A stretch of DNA of 45,717 nt from Octopus bimaculoides (lineage: Eukaryota): contig NC_068986.1 of the NCBI RefSeq assembly GCF_001194135.2, forward strand, positions 93,266,974-93,312,690, written 5' to 3'. The translations under genes and the position numbers were made by a program. Shown here one piece after another: positions 2,265-40,232 of this stretch (positions within the stretch are counted from its first letter, which is position 1; each line of letters opens with the position of its first letter). Below the pieces are notes generated by a model. The model did no database searches. It worked only from the letters and a program-made list of their open reading frames with translations, and had not been told where the DNA came from.

Positions 2265-2630
2265 GACTGCTGGTGGCACATAAAAAGCACCATTCAAGCA
2301 TGGTTGATGCCAGTACCAGCTGGCTGATCCCGTGTCAGTAGCTCGTAAAAAGCGTCCTTCGAGTGTGGTCATTGCCAGTTCCGCCTGACTGACTCCTGTG
2401 CCGATGGCATGTAAAAGGCACCATTCAAGCTTGGTTGATGCCAGTACTGCCTGACTGGCCTCATGCCAGTGGCACGTAAAAAGTACACACTACACTCTCA
2501 GAGTGGTTGGTGTTAGGAAGGGTATCCAGCTGTAGAAACTTTGCCATATCGGATTGGAGCCTGGTGCAGCCTTCTGGGTTGCCAGCATGGAAAGCAGACA
2601 TTAAATGATGACGACTATGATGACGATGTA
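2265..2630 (+). mobile_element. RTE-LINE 3'UTR / RTE-tailed repeat (family C)
   Basis: ggcacgtaaaaagcacc internal repeats, gttaggaagggcatccagctgtagaaac, ends gcatggaaagcagacattaaa(tga)n; same family as 5822-6160 and 12528-12880. Confidence 0.85.
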
Positions 2631-5821: not shown

Positions 5822-6160
5822 AAATCATCATCATCATCATCATCGTTTAACTTCCGCTTTCCATGCTAGCATGGGTTGGACGATTTGACTGAGGACTGGT
5901 GAACCGGATGGCAACACCAGGCTTCAATCTGATTTGGCAGAGTTTCTACAGCTGGATGCCCTTCCTAACGCCAACCACTCCGAGAGTATAGTGGGTGCTT
6001 TTACGTACCACCGGCATGAAGGCCAGTCAGGTGGTACTGGCAACAGCCATGCTCAAAATGGTGTATTTTACGTGCCACCTGCACAGGAACCAGTCCAGCG
6101 GCACTGACATGATCTCGCTCGAATGCCTTTACACATGCCACCGGCACAAGTGCCAGGAAT
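5822..6160 (-). mobile_element. Family C (RTE 3'UTR) young copy
   Basis: (cat)n cgtttaac..ccatgctagcatgggttggacg; near-identical to 12528-12880. Confidence 0.9.
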
Positions 6161-8602: not shown

Positions 8603-8818
8603 AAGATGGCAAGCTGGCAGAACCATTAGCATGCCAGGCAAACATGCTTAACAGCATTTCATCTGTCTTTATGTTCTGAGTTCAAATTCCACCAAGGTTG
8701 ACTTTGCCTTTCATTCTTTCTGGGTCGATAAAATAAGTACCAGTTGAGCCCTGGGAGTTGATGTAATCAACTTATGCCCTCCCGCAAAATTGTTGTCCTT
8801 GCATCAAAATTTGGAATC
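8603..8818 (+). mobile_element. tRNA-derived SINE family A
   Basis: gcaagctggcagaaccattagc..gttctgagttcaaattcc..gtcgataaaataagtaccag. Confidence 0.85.
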
Positions 8819-12488: not shown

Positions 12489-12527
<39 letters not shown>

Positions 12528-12530
<3 letters not shown>

Positions 12531-13190
12531 TCATCATCATCATCATCATCATCATCGTTTAACATCCTCTTTCCATGCTAGCATGGGTTGGACGATTTGA
12601 CTGGGGACTGGTGGACCAGGAGGCGACACCAGGCTCTGATCTGATTTGGCAGAGTTTCTACAGCTGGATGCCCTTCCTAACGCCAACCACTCCGAGAGTG
12701 TAGTAGGTGTTTTTTACATGCCACCGGCACGGAGGCCAGTCAGGTAGTACTGGCAACGGCCACACTCAAAATGGTGTATTTTATGTGCCACCTGCACAGG
12801 AGCCAATCCAGTAGCACTGACAATGATCTCGCTCAAATGTTTTTTCACATGCCACCAGCACAAGTGCCAGGAAGGCGACGCTGGGCACTTTCGCTTGCCC
12901 CAACAGGTCATCACAAGCCTAGTTTCATGTCCAATGAAGAAGACGACGTTGGCATGGGTGCCAGTCGTCTTCGCAAGCGGAGTTTAGTGTCCAATGAAGG
13001 AAGATACACATAAGAGGGCTGGCTACACCCCTGGCAGAGGCCTTGAATTTAGGTCTCACTTGGCTTGCCGGGTCTTCTCACGCACAGCATATTTCCAAAG
13101 GTCTCAGTCAGAAGTCATTGCCTCGGTGAGGCCCAATGTTCGAAGGTCGTGCCTCACCACCTCATCCCAGGTCTTCCATGGATTGGACAG
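12528..13190 (-). mobile_element. 5'-truncated RTE LINE: ORF end plus long 3'UTR and (GAT)n tail
   Basis: Minus frame PWKTWDEVVRHDLRTLGLTEAMTSD*DLWKYAVREKTRQAK* runs directly into family C sequence. Confidence 0.9.
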
Positions 13191-14269: not shown

Positions 14270-15040
14270 NNNNNNNNNNNNNNNNNNNNNNNNNNNNNNN
14301 NNNNNNNNNNNNNNNNNNNNNNNNNNNNNNNNNNNNNNNNNNNNNNNNNNNNNNNNNNNNNNNNNNNNNNNNNNNNNNNNNNNNNNNNNNNNNNNNNNNN
14401 NNNNNNNNNNNNNNNNNNNNNNNNNNNNNNNNNNNNNNNNNNNNNNNNNNNNNNNNNNNNNNNNNNNNNNNNNNNNNNNNNNNNNNNNNNNNNNNNNNNN
14501 NNNNNNNNNNNNNNNNNNNNNNNNNNNNNNNNNNNNNNNNNNNNNNNNNNNNNNNNNNNNNNNNNNNNNNNNNNNNNNNNNNNNNNNNNNNNNNNNNNNN
14601 NNNNNNNNNNNNNNNNNNNNNNNNNNNNNNNNNNNNNNNNNNNNNNNNNNNNNNNNNNNNNNNNNNNNNNNNNNNNNNNNNNNNNNNNNNNNNNNNNNNN
14701 NNNNNNNNNNNNNNNNNNNNNNNNNNNNNNNNNNNNNNNNNNNNNNNNNNNNNNNNNNNNNNNNNNNNNNNNNNNNNNNNNNNNNNNNNNNNNNNNNNNN
14801 NNNNNNNNNNNNNNNNNNNNNNNNNNNNNNNNNNNNNNNNNNNNNNNNNNNNNNNNNNNNNNNNNNNNNNNNNNNNNNNNNNNNNNNNNNNNNNNNNNNN
14901 NNNNNNNNNNNNNNNNNNNNNNNNNNNNNNNNNNNNNNNNNNNNNNNNNNNNNNNNNNNNNNNNNNNNNNNNNNNNNNNNNNNNNNNNNNNNNNNNNNNN
15001 NNNNNNNNNNNNNNNNNNNNNNNNNNNNNNNNNNNNNNNN
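14270..15040. other. Assembly gap (771 N)
   Basis: N run. Confidence 1.
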
Positions 15041-15058
15041 TATATATATATATATATA

Positions 15059-16423
<1,365 letters not shown>

Positions 16424-16784: not shown

Positions 16785-17200
16785 CACCACCACCATCATC
16801 ATCACTTAACATCTGTTTTCTGAGCTGGCATGGCTTGGATCATTTGATTGGGCCTGGCCAGGCAGAGCACTGCTCCAGGCTTTACTATCTGTTTTGGCAG
16901 GGTTTTTATAGTTGGATGCCCTTCCTAACATCGACCCCTTACAAAATGGACTAATGCTTTTTATGTGGCACCAGCACCAACAAGGCCAGTTTTGGCATGG
17001 TTTTTACAGCTGGATACCCTTCCAAACACCAACTACTCTAAGTGTGGATTGGATACAGCAGCACTGGTGAGGTTACCAAGCAATTTGCAAGACAAAGATC
17101 CTATGAGATGGGGTAGCATTGAAGGTGGTGCCTTTGTGCCAGGTGATGAGAGGTTAGAGTGTGACTGAAAAATAAGTACTGTCTCAAGTCCTAGAACTCA
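16785..17200 (-). mobile_element. Family C (RTE tail) decayed copy
   Basis: tggatgcccttcctaac present twice; (cat) tail. Confidence 0.7.
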
Positions 17201-17882
17201 TAGAGCTCCTTACCTAGGTTCTATGGTGTATAAGCGACCAAGATTGTAATATTCCTCTTGGATGGGATGCCAGTCCATTGCAAGCTTACTCATTAACAAC
17301 TGAGTAGACACTGGAACAACATAAATTGAAGTTCTTTTATTTTTTACTGAAGATCACAATGCACTACCCTTTCTGGGAATTGAAACCACTATCTTGTGAT
17401 CATTTGTGCAACTGGGCCTTGCACCTTCACATGATGATGATGATGATCGTCATGCGTATATATATCATCATCATTATCATCATTCACACATGTACACACA
17501 TACATATATATATATGTACATATACACATACACAGACACTTATATCTGTATATACACACTATATAAATCAACGAAGGAAAATTGTATTCTGTGTGTGTAT
17601 GTTTGTGTTTTTCATTACTAGTATATTTCTATCATATGAAGTATGTGCATGTATGTCCATTGGCAAAGATTAAAATAAGAGACTACTTCTCTGCTGAGTC
17701 TTCACTGAATTGTCTCCAAAGAACTTTGTCAGTCATGTAAATCTTTTATCTTTTTTAATCGACACATGTCTCCTGTCAGTTACCATATTATCAGTTCTCT
17801 AACCCCAATTCACTTCAGCTTATCACCAGTAGTATTTATCAAAAGAATATATGCTCCTTACACAAATATAATCGAAACATCT

Positions 17883-30639: not shown

Positions 30640-30790
30640 NNNNNNNNNNNNNNNNNNNNNNNNNNNNNNNNNNNNNNNNNNNNNNNNNNNNNNNNNNNNN
30701 NNNNNNNNNNNNNNNNNNNNNNNNNNNNNNNNNNNNNNNNNNNNNNNNNNNNNNNNNNNNNNNNNNNNNNNNNNNNNNNNNNNNNNNNNN
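30640..30790. other. Assembly gap (151 N)
   Basis: N run. Confidence 1.
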
Positions 30791-30880
30791 NAATAGGATG
30801 AATTCTTTTACAAGAATTTATCAAGTAGCTAGCGTGAAAAAAACCTCATAAGGGAAAAAAATCCATCATTTATTCCCGAA

Positions 30881-31243
30881 ATATATATTTTTATTTATAT
30901 AAGGGCATTACTATACAATAATGCCTCATGCTATGAGGGACTCTAAGGTCAGACTACCATAAAAAACATATTTTTACCGAACACGATGTTCGTTTGGTAT
31001 GTTGATTCTCTGTTTACTGCTATTTTTCTTGACCATATTATACTGACGAGTAGAGGTTGTATAATACTACAATAACTACGAAATCATGATCTATAATTCA
31101 GTCTGTTTTTAAGGGGTTGGCTTTGAGAGTTGCATTTCCTCGCGTTCGGTAAAAATGTGTTTTTTATGGTAGTCTGACCTTAGGTCCCTCATAGCGTGAG
31201 GCATTATTGTATAGCAATGCCCTTATATAAATAAATATATATA
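30881..31243 (+). mobile_element. Inverted-repeat element carrying a hammerhead; probable Penelope-like pLTR with inverted 3' duplication
   Basis: Arms 30902-30986 and 31140-31223 differ by 4 transitions and 1 indel, and the symmetry extends ~20 nt into AT flanks; the spacer contains an intact hammerhead. Confidence 0.8.
31037..31097 (+). ncRNA. Minimal type-I hammerhead ribozyme, intact core
   Basis: AUUAUA CUGACGA GUAG..CUAC GAAA UCAUGA UC^UAUAAU: 6-bp stem I, stem II GUAG/CUAC plus UUGUA/UACAA, palindrome AUCAUGAU, AUC cleavage after 31091. Confidence 0.9.
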
Positions 31244-32429
31244 TGTCTGATTATGCATATTGGAAGTTCTTAAAGCAAATGCCCAATTATTCCATTTATA
31301 ATACCAGCACACCAATTAGCAGGCAAGAATGCAGGGGATATTTGAAACCCTGTGCATTCTGTGAAGCAATTATATAAATATAAAATACAAATAAATATAA
31401 CATGTATATTTACATATGTATTCACGTACACACACATACACATACATATATGATGCCTACCCACTCATGTCTAAGGAAGGTCATCATTGACTATTAGAAT
31501 AACCATTCTTTCAATAGGGGTTATTTAAGTTTTAAGCCTGCCGGATTCCTATGTCTTGTTGGCAGATCTTATTCAAGAAAAAAACCTAACACAGTACAAA
31601 TGTATACATCTGTATGCAGAAATTTATTCCAATGTAAAATACTGTGTCCTTTAAAGCCAGCAATAGATTTATCAGCCTTTCCATATGTACAGCAAGTTGC
31701 ACAATCTTTTATTATGAATATACAGTTATCAACTTCTGTTTGACCTGGTGACTAGTGAATCCAGCCTTGGGAACATATATACATGATGGCAAATATTGCA
31801 GACAAATATATTTATGTAGCTTATATGTTTTTGTGCAGTTTATTGAAGTTCCGAGTGGTGAGTACATACGTCAGCAAAAACAGTCATGCTATCCTTTACT
31901 TGTCCTCTCCACTAAAGATGATCAAAAACATTTATTTCCCAAACATGTCACAAACATATTTTAATTAATCTAAAGCTTGTTTATTCTTAATCACTGCTTG
32001 GTGCTGATGCTGTTATATTAATCGCAACCAAGCAGTCATTCACTTGTGCAAGTCAGTCACTGATGTTGACTGTTTTTTTTTTTTAGTTAAAGCTACTGCT
32101 TTGGATCTTCTCAGGGTTATCTCTCTTCCATATTTCCCATTGAGGAAGATTAAAGAGCCAGAAATATATATATGAGAATCCAATAGGTGGAAGTGCTGGG
32201 CAGATATGGTGTTTTTGCATTTTTTACCATAAGCGAGAGTATTTTCTCCATGGTAACTGTCTTCAAAAGTTAAAATATATCACAAACCTATTTTAACTAA
32301 TCTAAAATTCATTTATTTCTTAATTGACCCCCAACTAATTTTAATTCTTTTAAAGAGGATTCCACACGTTCCTCAATCTGCAGCCCTTGTTTGTAATGGG
32401 AGCACCTGCATCATACAAACCCCTCATAC

Positions 32430-34340
32430 AGCATCTGTTTTGGTTTTCTCTGATCATTCATTTATATAACATGTCTGGTTCATTGTAACTGATGTTGATT
32501 CAGTGTTCAAGACTTTGGTTCTCTGCAAAATCTCTGACTGTAATTCATGAGGACCAACTCCAATTCAGAATGTCTTAAACATCTTTGATAAAAGCACTCA
32601 AGGACCTTTATATTATGCTTGTAAAGGACCCGTGGTTCAAACGAGTAAAGAAGAGAAGTCTGCCCCCAATTACAATACACAGCAATTTCTGTTAACCTTA
32701 TGACTGCCTGATGGGACCATGCCATGTTGGGAACAAACATGAGCTTCAAGGGCCCAGGAGAAATCAGTTTCCCTCTGAAGCCATAGAGCTGTTTCACCAA
32801 TTGAGAAGCCAGAACAGCTGAGTGTGCTAGCAAAATTCCAGATGGCAATTAGAGTGAAAAAAAAGATGAGGACTAGTTAAGAGGAAGGATCTTGAGAATC
32901 ATCCATGCAGATGGAAGTTGGGCAATATAGGAAGAATTATTTGAAGACCAGAGTTTCCAAGGTGCTGCTGAAGTATTGAGACATATTTGAATCAGTCACA
33001 GAAGCTGGTTTAATGAAAAGATGTTGAGGTTCAGAGACTCTTGCCTGCAAAGCACAGCATTCACAGTTTTATTCTGCTACAGTAGGCTGTCAGATAAATG
33101 GCAGAATTTAGCACTTGTTCATTGCAAGACCTCAACCTTGGTGATTACTCATACAGAACACTTGCTGGGAAGGTCTTGCTTGTGACATTGAAGCTGCTGT
33201 AGATGAAAGTGTTAGTAAAAAATTTAACATCTCTTAGGACAAGCTTATAGATCAAAAATAAATTTAAGCATTGCTTGAATAAATGGACTGTCCAACATTC
33301 TGAGCCATGATAAGACTTGACATTACAGGTATCATGGTTGTATCATGCTTGTGAATAATTATCTATGTTGTTGCATGTTAACCTTTGTGGCTAAAGTGAG
33401 TGCTGGCAATATACAGACCATATTCTTCAAAAAATTCTTGGAACATGTGATTGATGATACAGACACACACATATATGGTAGACGTCAACTTGTGTAAAAG
33501 TCGGACCACTTCTTGGAGAGTTAAGTTTCTTGAGTGTTATCATGGAAGAAGATAACTGCTAAGCACAGGATTGCTGACCACTTCTGGAATTAGGCATACT
33601 TTGTTTTGATAACCCTTTTATGAGTTCTTCCTAATTTTTTGGTAAGCAGTACTAGTCCTTGGAAAGGTCTGCTCACTCAGTTGAGCTGCTACTGCTGAAT
33701 CATTCCACTGCCATTGTTTGGAAAAGAACCAAGCAATATCCCAAGCTGACTTCACATGTTTCTAATTGTACACTTCCTGCTAATCAAGTCTGTGTGTTCC
33801 ACTGCTCTCCATCACAGAAATTTATGAGAATTACACACACACACATGCATACACACATGCATACCCAGTGATTGTTCCATTTTCACAGAGGATTGTCATC
33901 TCTTTGTGCTTCCTTGTTGTCAATGGCATTTCTAGCTTTCCATCCACGACCTCTTAGAGGACTATTCCGTCTTGCTGCAGATCTGCATAGTTTCAAGTCT
34001 AGGGGACAGACAAAAGTCCTAACTTATTGTGTCCTTTCAATTGGTTAAGTCAGCATGCTTCACCACATGTCCATCCCATGGGACTTTCGGTAGATGGAAT
34101 GGCAAATGAGGTTACCTTAAAGAAATATTTTTATGTTGTTAGATTGTAGTGATAAACACTTGTACAACACAGATACCACTGTCTGAGTTTCCATGATTAG
34201 TATCTGGTGACAGACCAAAGTCAGATGACCAGTAATCATGGGAGACAGCCTGTTTTATGTCAGAGTGCCCCTCTCTTAGAAGGATTCTGGGACAACAGTT
34301 AGGTGGGGTAGAGGTCTTTCACTTTTGGTGGCATGCTAAT
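32430..34340 (-). mobile_element. Decayed RTE-BovB-like LINE
   Basis: LLYSFEPRVLYKHNIKVLECFYQRCLR resembles LLYG.ETWT.Y..HI..LE.FHQRCLR; weaker RT/endonuclease remnants upstream; the upstream boundary is uncertain. Confidence 0.65.
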
Positions 34341-36639: not shown

Positions 36640-37900
36640 ATTTATCATCATCACCATCATTATCTTCGTCATAATTTTTAGGTCCCCTTTTTCCATGCTT
36701 CATTGTGTGGGACCTGTCTGTTTTAGCACAGTGTCCCCCTCAACCTCTCTTGTGAGGTCCAATATCATTAAGATCACATCTCATCTTTACTTCCCATCTC
36801 TTCGTTTTTTCCTCTCCCACATGCTTTTTCCACCAACACAGTCATTATTCATACACATCATATTATTCACATTATTTATACCATCACACTCTTCCAACGT
36901 TTACACTATGGCTGTTATCTTTAATGCCTAGTTTTATCTCTCAGAACACTTGCCCTTTGTTGTAGATGCACACTGACATTTTCTTATCCAGTGGAGCATG
37001 CTTGCAATATTTCTTTCAAGCCTTTGCAGTTTTCCACATTTAGTGCTCATAATCTCACTACCATGCAATATCAAACCTTATAAACTCGTAGCATACAATA
37101 TACCCTTCCCTACGAATGAGAAGACAGCCCTTGTTGCAAATACAGGTAATAACAACTTCCTGAATTTTTTCCATTCCATTCTTACTCTGGTCACCATGCT
37201 TTGCTGCTGATTAGATCACCTAGAAAAAAATATAAAAAAGAAACAGAAACTATCTCGTAGTTCTAATGAATCTTCTGAGCAATCAAGAGACTTCATTATT
37301 TAATGGCTCTTACTGCTAACTGTTCCTGCATATCAGTTGCACATGAAATCCTTTCCCTTTGTTCACCTGCCTGCGATCTCATTGCACATTTTTGAACCAT
37401 TGTTTGCATATATAATGCACAGTTGCTACCTTCTCTTTTTCTGCATGTCAAACGTTGCCAGTCCCCAGATGGTAGTAGTGTTTTGTTTTCTATGATGCCA
37501 ACTTGATCTGTCGGTCTGTTGATCCTAAACCCTGTTTCCATGTTTAGAACTTTACCCCTAATTCTCCAACTGATTTGGCTATGAGAAGAACTAGGTTATC
37601 AACAGACAAGAGCCACCACTCATGGAGAGCTATTCTTCAGCTCCTTTATTATGAACTGCATAACTATAATAAAGAAGAAGGAGCTAAGAACTGCCCCCTG
37701 ATAGACATCTACACACATGCTAAATTTTTCACTGAACTCATTGATAATTCTCATTTTGTGGTCCATGGCTTGCATAGCTCTCACCAGCCATTCATCCACC
37801 AATAGTTTCTCAGTGACCAACAGACTACAGAGTATGGTACCCTATCAAAGGCTTTTTCCATGTCAACGAATGTTAGATATACAATTGTTCTTGGCTTAGA
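36640..37900 (-). mobile_element. Decayed RTE LINE (RT to 3' end)
   Basis: DEWLVRAMQAM..VDVYQGAVLSSFFFIIVMQ..KNSSP (RT) and PSGDWQ..CRK; ends gcatggaaaa..(gat)n. Confidence 0.85.
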
Positions 37901-40014: not shown

Positions 40015-40232
40015 GTTTCAAAATTTTATTTTGGCACAAGTCCAGCAATTTCGGGGGAGGGAGCAAGTCAATTACATCGGTGCCATTGCTCAACTGGTAC
40101 TTAATTTATTGACTCCGAAAAGATAAAAGGCAAAGATGACCCTGGTGGAATTTGAACCCGGAATGTAAAGATGGATGAAATGTCACAAAGCATTTTGCCT
40201 AGCGTGTTAACAGCTCTGCCAGCTCACTACCT
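40015..40232 (-). mobile_element. tRNA-derived SINE family A
   Basis: Reverse complement of family A. Confidence 0.85.

What the first reader, a model, noticed from the sequence alone, without database searches (positions are those of the whole stretch)
31037..31097. Intact minimal type-I hammerhead ribozyme with a palindromic stem III
Every conserved core nucleotide is present (CUGACGA 31043-31049, GAAA 31080-31083, UC 31090-31091). Stem I AUUAUA/UAUAAU is perfect, and stem II is GUAG/CUAC extended by UUGUA/UACAA (seen). Stem III is replaced by the self-complementary AUCAUGAU, the hallmark of PLE-associated minimal hammerheads that cleave efficiently as dimers (established). Predicted cleavage is after C31091. 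As a lone intronic copy it should be weak, but it could be activated by pairing in trans with another transcript of the family (inference).
Basis: partly seen in the sequence, partly recalled or inferred. Interest (0 to 1): 0.9.

Follow-up and report, generated by a model that had tools for sequence, protein, structure and literature searches.

The report
Hammerhead ribozyme in octopus retroelement relic
A complete hammerhead self-cleaving RNA motif really is at this spot, but it sits in a small, old, broken copy of a jumping-gene type already known to carry such ribozymes, so it is a good ordinary example and not a discovery.

Summary
The motif is real and at the stated coordinates. 31037-31097 (+) has every invariant hammerhead core base, a 6-bp helix I, a 4-bp helix II extended by a 2x2 internal loop, 6 more pairs and a hexaloop, and the 8-nt palindrome AUCAUGAU as helix III. 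Rfam Hammerhead_1 (RF00163) aligns it end to end at 24.4 bits. That is below the curated 34-bit cut-off, and the match appears only when the 63 nt are searched alone. In 205 Mb of dinucleotide shuffles, 0 motifs of this quality appeared.

The host is an octopod. An unselected 20.5-kb Octopus bimaculoides locus holds a second, unrelated type-I hammerhead with a palindromic helix III.

The ribozyme lies in a 261-nt unit (30987-31247, +). An inverted copy of that unit's last 109 nt (30878-30986) abuts it, and both outer ends are AT-rich. This matches published Penelope-like element (PLE) insertions. No reverse transcriptase (RT) or endonuclease ORF, tandem copy or same-family copy could be found.

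Folding favours an inactive monomer and a helix-III dimer. The arms differ by about 6%, so the intact core needs no selection. Verdict: a new member of a known kind, low interest.

The parts
31037..31097 (+). Type-I hammerhead ribozyme motif. Helix I 31037-31042 / 31092-31097. Core CUGACGA 31043-31049. Helix II 31050-31079. GAAA 31080-31083. Helix III palindrome AUCAUGAU 31083-31090. Predicted cleavage is 3' of C31091.
   Evidence: Sequence; descriptor scans; Rfam RF00163 full-length match at 24.4 bits; shuffle controls.
31050..31079 (+). Extended helix II. GUAG/CUAC (with G10.1-C11.1), a 2x2 internal loop AG/AA, GUUGUA/UACAAU, and the hexaloop UAAUAC.
   Evidence: This is the only part of the motif present in every predicted fold.
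31083..31090 (+). Self-complementary helix III (AUCAUGAU). As a monomer it gives 2 bp plus a CAUG loop. Between two copies it gives 8 bp.
   Evidence: Duplex energy -8.6 kcal/mol. The dimer MFE uses exactly this pairing.
31031..31103 (+). Possible closure of helix I. GAC 31031-31033 pairs with GUC 31101-31103 beyond a 3x3 internal loop (CAU/UCA), 6 bp from the core.
   Evidence: Present in the MFE folds of 31027-31107 and of the whole element. This is prediction only.
30987..31247 (+). Direct, 5'-truncated unit of the repeat (about 261 nt). It runs from the junction with the inverted copy, through the ribozyme, to the AT-rich 3' end ...CCCTTATATAAATAAATATATATAT. The cleavage site is about 155 nt from that 3' end.
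   Evidence: Repeat analysis and arm alignment. The left boundary is defined only by where the inverted repeat stops.
30878..30986 (-). Inverted copy of the last ~109 nt of the unit. It stops short of the ribozyme.
   Evidence: 94-95% complementary to 31140-31247; 93.6% by blastn. The alignment shows 4 transitions (2 at CpG), 1 transversion and 1 indel.
31140..31247 (+). Right arm, which is the 3'-terminal part of the direct unit and the partner of the inverted copy.
30879..30888 (.). Candidate 10-bp target-site duplication AAATATATAT, whose second copy is at 31233-31242. It is ambiguous because the same bases also fit the inverted repeat.
   Evidence: Longest direct repeat shared by the two boundaries.
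30640..30791 (.). Assembly gap (152 N) 86 nt upstream of the element. More of the insertion could be hidden there.
   Evidence: PMC8557442 notes that complex PLE insertions break short-read assemblies.

Best explanation
This is a relic insertion of a hammerhead-bearing retroelement of the Penelope-like (PLE) kind. It could derive from the pseudo-LTR/3' region of an autonomous PLE or from a short non-autonomous derivative (retrozyme-like). The host is an octopod genome. Inferred mechanism of origin: a PLE enzyme with reverse transcriptase (RT) and endonuclease activities cut both strands of an AT-rich target. It primed reverse transcription from the 3' end of the element RNA on both strands. 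This gave two 5'-truncated cDNAs joined head to head, one of 261 nt that reaches past the ribozyme and one of 109 nt that does not. Role of the ribozyme in the active element (established for the class, not for this copy): self-cleavage of longer-than-unit transcripts. Two ribozyme copies pair through their palindromic helix III to form a double hammerhead, probably helped by protein. At this locus there is one copy. The monomer prefers an inactive fold, and any read-through transcript would also lock the flanks into a ~109-bp hairpin. It is therefore most likely a neutral, largely inactive relic. Shown: the motif, the architecture and the octopod host. Inferred: PLE parentage, the dual-priming origin and present inactivity.
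For: A complete type-I hammerhead far beyond chance. Both outer ends of the 370-bp structure are the same AT-rich 3' end, and the ribozyme lies on the longer copy. PMC8557442 describes exactly this: strong 5' truncation, an adjacent inverted 5'-truncated copy forming inverted repeats, hammerheads near the 3' end in pLTRs, a (TA)n target bias, and assembly breaks. PMC11167929 shows a PLE protein that cuts and extends both DNA strands and prefers AT-rich sites. PMC4209133 reports paired hammerheads 100-700 bp apart on opposite strands and mostly single truncated copies. The arms differ by about 6%, so the palindrome is not an assembly artefact. The host is an octopod, sharing 63 repeat matches at 77-96% identity with an O. 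bimaculoides locus. PLEs are documented in Octopus vulgaris, including recently active families (PMC13282606). An unselected 20.5-kb O. bimaculoides locus holds a second type-I hammerhead with a palindromic helix III (ACCAUGGU) and a long helix II, scoring 21.9 bits against Rfam. Its two departures from the type-I consensus are at the two core CpG sites. Folding favours a dimer through helix III.
Against: No RT or GIY-YIG ORF remnant was found in the window (Pfam on all ORF segments of at least 60 aa). That scan also missed the evident Tc1-like transposase, so its sensitivity was poor. No second copy of this 370-bp family could be retrieved anywhere, so family conservation, covariation and the link to an autonomous PLE are untested. 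The Rfam score is below the gathering cut-off. The extra nucleotide between A9 and G10.1 typical of PLE min-HHRs is absent. Long terminal inverted repeats plus a possible 10-bp duplication would also fit a non-autonomous Mutator-like DNA transposon. With about 3% divergence per arm, an intact core is expected by chance about two times in three (my arithmetic), so intactness says nothing about function.
Confidence: 0.68

Rival explanations
1. A non-autonomous DNA transposon or foldback element (for example Mutator-like, with ~100-bp terminal inverted repeats and a 9-11-bp target duplication). Its internal region either captured a hammerhead-bearing fragment or resembles one by chance.
For: Arms of 109 nt at 94-95% complementarity around a 153-nt core. 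A possible 10-bp direct repeat AAATATATAT at both boundaries. Mutator and MITE families are listed for Octopus vulgaris. No retroelement ORF lies nearby.
Against: The candidate duplication is equally explained by the inverted repeat running into self-complementary AT sequence. A chance hammerhead of this quality was not seen in 205 Mb of shuffles. Hammerheads are not known cargo of DNA transposons, whereas both features are joint hallmarks of PLE insertions.
Confidence: 0.12
2. A purely accidental hammerhead-like string with no evolutionary link to ribozyme-bearing elements.
For: Only one copy is in hand. The monomer fold is no more stable than shuffles (z -0.74). It scores below Rfam's gathering threshold and was missed in larger searches.
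Against: Expected 0.037 loose hits per window and 0 hits of this quality in 300 window shuffles and in 205 Mb of shuffles. The CM match is full-length with all pairs standard. A second independent example turned up in an unselected octopus locus. The PLE-like insertion context is independent of the motif.
Confidence: 0.04
3. A domesticated ribozyme or hairpin with a host function. Examples would be an intronic self-cleaving switch, or a 109-bp double-stranded RNA serving as a substrate for editing or small-RNA production, with the ribozyme at its tip.
For: The core is intact, including two mutable CpG sites. The whole 386 nt folds as one long hairpin with z -24. Conserved intronic hammerheads are known in amniotes (from my own knowledge, untested here).
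Against: No gene, exon or transcript evidence could be obtained. The arms have drifted by about 6%, mostly by transitions including CpG decay, as expected for neutral DNA. Intactness is expected by chance at this age.
Confidence: 0.05
4. A unit of a metazoan non-LTR retrozyme, that is a tandem 170-400-bp repeat expressed as circular RNA, and not a PLE insertion proper.
For: The canonical type-I architecture is the one reported for animal retrozymes, including in a mollusc (PMC7229834). A 2026 preprint argues that retrozymes derive from PLE pLTRs. The unit length of at least 261 nt fits.
Against: No tandem array is present. The head-to-head inverted partial copy is described for PLE insertions, not for retrozyme arrays. 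This largely overlaps the best explanation, since retrozymes are thought to be mobilised by PLE machinery.
Confidence: 0.1

Closest known systems
Canonical metazoan type-I hammerhead (Rfam Hammerhead_1, RF00163; newt satellite 2, Schistosoma Sm-alpha, animal retrozymes)
   Same: Same core, type-I topology, 6-bp helix I and 4-bp proximal helix II with G10.1-C11.1. Helix III is an 8-nt palindrome, as in the Rfam consensus ACGcgCGU. The model aligns end to end. A dimeric active form is expected.
   Different: A 26-nt insertion in helix II (internal loop, 6 more pairs, hexaloop). The helices are AU-rich. The score is 24.4 bits against the 34-bit gathering score. The copy is single and not in a tandem array.
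PLE-associated hammerheads (min-HHRs and small-helix-III variants; Cervera & de la Pena 2014, PMC4209133)
   Same: Palindromic 15.x-16.x positions, G10.1-C11.1, a longer than usual helix II, and occurrence as a single copy in what looks like a truncated element.
   Different: The unpaired nucleotide between A9 and G10.1 is absent. A 2-bp helix III with a tetraloop is present, so it is not 'minimal'. No PLE ORF or pLTR pair is present here.
PLE insertion architecture (Craig et al. 2021, PMC8557442; PAc in vitro system, PMC11167929)
   Same: 5' truncation, an adjacent inverted 5'-truncated copy giving inverted repeats, AT-rich ends or target, a hammerhead near the 3' end, and an assembly gap next to it. 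The enzyme is shown to prime on both strands.
   Different: The structure is only 370 bp. There is no coding part, no recognisable 30-40-bp tail, and no demonstrated sequence match to any PLE family.
LINE-1 twin priming (5' inversions)
   Same: Two priming events on one target produce an inverted segment.
   Different: Twin priming inverts a more 5' part of the RNA and does not duplicate the 3' end. Here both arms are the same 3'-terminal 109 nt (from my own knowledge).
Long-TIR non-autonomous DNA transposons (MULE-type, foldback)
   Same: ~100-bp inverted termini, a short core, and a possible 10-bp duplication.
   Different: These are not known to carry ribozymes. The termini and duplication here are ambiguous.

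Membership tests
Hammerhead ribozyme, type I | Invariant core nucleotides C3 U4 G5 A6 G8 A9 / G12 A13 A14 / A15.1-U16.1 and H17 not G | tested here: met
   All are present: CUGACGA, GAAA, and U31090-C31091.
Hammerhead ribozyme, type I | Three helices around the core with helix I open (type-I topology) | tested here: met
   Helix I 6 bp, helix II 4+6 bp, helix III 2 bp as a monomer or 8 bp as a dimer. The Rfam structure line shows no non-standard pair.
Hammerhead ribozyme, type I | Score at or above the Rfam RF00163 gathering threshold (34 bits) | tested here: not met
   24.4 bits, and no hit at the gathering threshold. The deficit is plausibly due to the 26-nt helix II insertion, but the curated cut-off is not reached.
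Hammerhead ribozyme, type I | Conservation of the core and compensatory changes in the helices among homologous copies | tested here: inconclusive
   No same-family copy could be retrieved. One unrelated octopus hammerhead has different helix sequences on the same scaffold.
Hammerhead ribozyme, type I | Site-specific Mg2+-dependent self-cleavage giving 5'-OH and 2',3'-cyclic phosphate ends | not testable with these tools
   Needs a bench assay. Folding predicts an inactive monomer and a dimer-competent helix III.
PLE min-HHR (Cervera & de la Pena 2014) | [quoted passage not shown] | tested here: met
   AUCAUGAU is a perfect palindrome.
PLE min-HHR (Cervera & de la Pena 2014) | Unpaired nucleotide between A9 and G10.1 | tested here: not met
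   G31050 directly follows A9 and pairs with C31079.
PLE min-HHR (Cervera & de la Pena 2014) | No helix III or loop 3 beyond the core (minimal form) | tested here: not met
   A15.1-U16.1 and U15.2-A16.2 plus a CAUG loop are present. This is the 'canonical' layout of that paper.
PLE min-HHR (Cervera & de la Pena 2014) | G10.1-C11.1 pair and an enlarged helix II | tested here: met
   G31050-C31079. Helix II totals 10 pairs interrupted by a 2x2 loop.
Penelope-like element insertion | ORF with an RT domain and a GIY-YIG endonuclease domain | tested here: not met
   No Pfam hit on ORF segments of at least 60 aa across the window (low sensitivity). This is expected for a 370-bp truncated copy, but parentage remains unproven.
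Penelope-like element insertion | 5'-truncated copy with an adjacent inverted 5'-truncated copy sharing the 3' end | tested here: met
   30878-30986 (-) equals the last 109 nt of 30987-31247 (+).
Penelope-like element insertion | AT-rich or (TA)n target and a variable target duplication | tested here: inconclusive
   Both ends are AT-rich, and a 10-bp AAATATATAT repeat is possible but ambiguous.
Penelope-like element insertion | Sequence homology to the pLTR or 3' UTR of an autonomous PLE of the same genome | not testable with these tools
   No searchable octopus genome or repeat library was on hand.
Metazoan non-LTR retrozyme | Head-to-tail tandem repeats, each with a type-I hammerhead | tested here: not met
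   No tandem array and no second copy in the window. A 152-N gap upstream leaves a small doubt.
MITE / long-TIR DNA transposon | Terminal inverted repeats plus a fixed-length target-site duplication, in many copies with the same ends | tested here: inconclusive
   Inverted repeats are present, the duplication is ambiguous, and copy number is unknown.

The most novel reading that the evidence does not exclude
Octopods may carry an undescribed family of short non-autonomous hammerhead elements. In it, a canonical-type ribozyme with a long helix II sits at the tip of a ~100-bp double-stranded hairpin. Hairpin formation, or its editing or dicing in an animal with exceptionally heavy RNA editing, would then gate ribozyme dimerisation and cleavage. 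This copy may be retained for a host function in a transcript.
Probability: 0.05. Interest if true: 0.6.

Novelty: new member of a known kind. Interest (0 to 1): 0.2.

Why it matters
It adds a clean cephalopod example to the known link between type-I hammerheads with a palindromic helix III and Penelope-like or retrozyme retroelements. The head-to-head structure with a shared 3' end is a neat genomic footprint of the two-strand priming recently shown in vitro for a PLE enzyme. There is also a practical lesson. The curated Rfam scan missed both octopus ribozymes unless the exact ~60-160 nt were searched alone. Counts of hammerheads in cephalopod genomes made with default settings are therefore probably underestimates. 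Nothing here changes how these ribozymes are thought to work.

Tried and rejected
1. Rfam at the gathering threshold on the whole window, and at E<=10 on 801 nt and on 96 nt, gave no hammerhead. This turned out to be a filter or threshold effect, because 63 nt alone gave the full-length match.
2. A search for other copies in the window by blastn with word size 7 found none.
3. A six-frame pseudo-protein of the element was searched against 5.8 billion proteins, hoping for spurious ORFs over sister copies. There were no hits.
4. Pattern scans of IMG/VR and two scans of JGI metagenomes, one with the ribozyme and one with a 20-mer of the arm, gave 0 matches. These collections hold essentially no cephalopod DNA, so this says nothing about copy number.
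5. Exact-protein look-ups of three window ORFs, meant to locate the source contig, were not on record.
6. A Pfam scan of 96 ORF segments found nothing.
7. The last protein search, using what looked by eye like LINE RT fragments, gave no hits.
9. Cluster look-ups gave no further octopus loci.
10. Supplements of the two key papers are not held, and Lunse et al. 2017 is not held.
11. A pol III/tRNA-derived SINE origin was considered. No tRNA was found and no convincing A or B box was seen by eye.
12. An assembly artefact as the source of the palindrome was rejected, because the arms differ by about 6%.
13. Homology between this unit and the L001 hammerhead unit was tested. Only a 36-nt hairpin module is weakly similar (uncorrected p about 0.013 over 8 tests), so homology is not established.

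Full report
THE OBSERVATION. The sequence at 31037-31097 on the + strand reads ATTATA CTGACGA GTAG AG GTTGTA TAATAC TACAAT AA CTAC GAAA TCATGA T C TATAAT. The 13 conserved hammerhead positions are all present. Helix I is 6 bp, all A-U. Helix II starts with the typical G10.1-C11.1 pair and has 4 bp, then a 2x2 internal loop, 6 more pairs (one G.U) and a hexaloop. The eight bases from A15.1 to U16.1 form the perfect palindrome AUCAUGAU. By the hammerhead rule, cleavage would fall 3' of C31091.

IS IT MORE THAN CHANCE? A descriptor I wrote finds this as the only hit on either strand of the window. It is still the only hit when one core mismatch is allowed. In 300 dinucleotide-preserving shuffles of the window, a loose version of the descriptor hit 0.037 times per window, and the observed quality never occurred. 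In 3,218 shuffles of window plus an octopus locus (205 Mb), no motif combined helix I >=6 bp, helix II >=3 bp and a perfect 8-nt palindromic helix III. One did so with helix I >=4 bp.

Rfam was at first negative: at the gathering threshold on the window, and at E<=10 on 801 nt and on 96 nt. When only 63 nt were submitted, Hammerhead_1 (RF00163) aligned 31037-31097 to model positions 1-45 of 45. No pair was non-standard, the score was 24.4 bits, and E was 1.7e-4 for that search. Scaled by me to the whole window, that is about E 0.1 over all 4,227 families, or about 3e-5 for this one family. The score is below the curated 34 bits, most plausibly because of the 26-nt insertion in helix II.

THE HOST. 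The window has N gaps and dense microsatellites and is 30-40% G+C. A Tc1-like transposase remnant at about 15.0-16.3 kb has relatives that include Octopus bimaculoides proteins. A 20.5-kb O. bimaculoides locus fetched through one of them (L001, GCA_001194135.2) shares 63 interspersed-repeat matches with the window at 77-96% identity. The window therefore comes from an octopod. The species itself was not determined.

THE SURROUNDINGS. The ribozyme lies in a 153-nt core between two 109-nt inverted arms, 30878-30986 and 31140-31247, which are 94-95% complementary. Aligning the arms shows that the repeat ends at ...CCCTTATATAAATAAATATATATAT on both outer sides, after which the flanks are unrelated.

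On the + strand this reads as one unit of about 261 nt (30987-31247). The ribozyme is about 155 nt from its AT-rich 3' end. Preceding it is an inverted copy of only the last 109 nt of the same unit. The arms differ by four transitions (two at CpG), one transversion and one indel, so the palindrome is old and not an assembly artefact. There is no tandem copy, no other copy in the window, no tRNA-like part, and no RT or endonuclease domain in any ORF segment of at least 60 aa (low sensitivity). A 152-N gap lies 86 nt upstream. A 10-bp direct repeat, AAATATATAT, sits at both boundaries. Because AT runs are self-complementary, it fits the inverted repeat equally well.

WHAT THE LITERATURE SAYS.
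- Cervera and de la Pena (PMC4209133) describe canonical metazoan type-I hammerheads: helix I 6 bp, helix II 4 bp, and helix III 1-2 bp with a 2-4-nt palindromic loop, inactive as monomers and active as dimers. They also describe PLE-borne variants with a longer helix II, an extra base after A9 and palindromic 15.2-16.2. These variants are found mostly as single copies in truncated elements and sometimes as pairs on opposite strands 100-700 bp apart. In vitro activity was low even for dimers.
- Craig et al. (PMC8557442) describe PLE insertions as strongly 5'-truncated. They often have an inverted 5'-truncated copy adjacent, so that inverted repeats flank the unit. The hammerhead lies near the 3' end, there is a bias for (TA)n targets, and short-read assemblies frequently fail at such sites.
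- The PAc study (PMC11167929) shows that a PLE protein cuts and extends both strands of an AT-rich target. It also shows that its hammerhead cleaved only when the protein was present.
- PLEs, including recently active families, are annotated in Octopus vulgaris (PMC13282606). 235 Rfam Hammerhead_1 hits were reported for the giant squid genome (PMC6962438).

BEST EXPLANATION. The window's structure matches this picture point by point, apart from the missing coding part. I therefore read it as a relic of a PLE-type insertion, either an autonomous element's 3'/pLTR region or a short non-autonomous derivative. It would have been made by reverse transcription primed on both strands of an AT-rich target. 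L1-style twin priming does not fit, because that inverts a more 5' segment and does not duplicate the 3' end (my own knowledge).

HOW THE RIBOZYME WOULD BEHAVE. The 61-nt RNA alone is no more stable than shuffles (z -0.74). The active monomer fold scores -2.1 kcal/mol against an MFE of -8.4. In that MFE, CUGA of the core pairs with UCA.G of helix III, and the same inactive pairing appears in the fold of the whole element. Two copies give an MFE of -23.4 kcal/mol, built on the 8-bp intermolecular AUCAUGAU helix with both helices II intact. The complete double hammerhead scores -21.0, against -16.8 for two separate monomers. This supports the 'dimer-prone' reading.

At this locus there is only one copy. 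Any transcript spanning the arms would also form a ~109-bp stem (z -24). Using the clock, the arm divergence puts the insertion at very roughly 9 million years. About 0.4 substitutions would be expected in the core over that time, so an intact core is expected about two times in three without selection (my arithmetic). Present function is therefore neither needed nor indicated.

AN INDEPENDENT SECOND EXAMPLE. The unselected octopus locus L001 contains, at 17141-17218 (+), another type-I hammerhead. It has a 7-bp helix I, CUGAUGA, a long helix II with an 8-bp distal stem and hexaloop, GAAA, and the palindrome ACCAUGGU. It scores 21.9 bits against Rfam Hammerhead_1. Its dimer MFE is double-hammerhead-like. 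Its two differences from the type-I consensus (U7 and U11.1) are at the two core CpG positions, as CpG decay would produce. Its flanks are not detectably related to the window's unit. One 36-nt hairpin module is weakly similar (uncorrected p about 0.013 over eight tests), which I do not count as established. Finding a second motif of this kind in 20 kb taken at random suggests such ribozymes may be common in octopus DNA. It makes a chance origin of the first very unlikely, but it is not a same-family copy.

RIVALS.
- A long-TIR non-autonomous DNA transposon (Mutator-like) would explain the arms and a 10-bp duplication. It would not explain the ribozyme (0.12).
- A retrozyme unit overlaps the main explanation but lacks the defining tandem array (0.10).
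- Pure chance (0.04) and host domestication (0.05) have little support.
- Whether the site is intronic could not be judged, because no exon or gene model could be identified with the tools available.

VERDICT. It is a type-I hammerhead with a palindromic helix III of the retroelement kind. However, it has the canonical layout and not the minimal one. 'Efficient' dimer cleavage is overstated, and 'intronic' and trans-activation are unsupported. It is a new member of a known kind and of low interest. The decisive missing piece is a search of octopus genomes for sister copies and their parent element, which these tools could not reach.

Noticed in passing
L001:17141-17218 (+) (Octopus bimaculoides CM046616.1, about 46.85 Mb): A second type-I hammerhead motif in an unselected locus. 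It has a 7-bp helix I, CUGAUGA, a long helix II with a hexaloop, and the palindromic helix III ACCAUGGU. It scores 21.9 bits against Rfam Hammerhead_1. It lies in a ~640-bp stretch bounded by (TA)n runs and is followed by a SINE-like segment.
   Followed up: partly
window 31037-31097 and L001:17141-17218: Rfam's speed filters hide both octopus hammerheads unless about 60-160 nt are searched alone. Default genome-wide counts of hammerheads in cephalopods are therefore probably too low.
   Followed up: yes
window 15041-16313 (+): A frameshifted Tc1-like (DDE_3) transposase remnant abuts the 771-N gap at 14270-15040. The best protein relatives are about 55% identical. It is 73% identical at the DNA level to a copy in O. 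bimaculoides L001.
   Followed up: partly
window 2268-2585, 5823-6159, 12515-13148, 8611-8791, 40033-40210 and others: Many copies of octopus interspersed repeats (SINE-like), 77-96% identical to copies in L001. Several end in microsatellites.
   Followed up: partly
window 32510-32848 (-) and 37623-37841 (-): ORF fragments that by eye resemble non-LTR reverse transcriptase motifs. Neither Pfam nor the protein search confirmed this.
   Followed up: partly
window 31392-31451 (-): Sub-threshold Rfam microRNA matches (mir-1277, mir-297, mir-466) fall on a TG/TA microsatellite hairpin. They are almost certainly compositional.
   Followed up: no
window 30893-30941 / 31184-31232 and L001:17080-17132: Each arm of the element carries small internal hairpins (GGCATTA..TAATGCC and CCTCAT..ATGAGG). 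A weakly similar hairpin module lies just upstream of the L001 hammerhead (28 of 36 matches, uncorrected p about 0.013). This could hint at a shared module in a circularly permuted unit, but it is unproven.
   Followed up: partly
L001:16907-16978: A perfect 27-bp inverted repeat with an 18-nt spacer lies directly after a (GAT)n/(TA)n microsatellite, at the upstream edge of the stretch that holds the L001 hammerhead.
   Followed up: no
window 31060-31065: The helix II loop region contains UAUAAU, identical to the 3' strand of helix I. The 5' strand AUUAUA therefore has a competing partner inside helix II, which is another route to an inactive fold.
   Followed up: no
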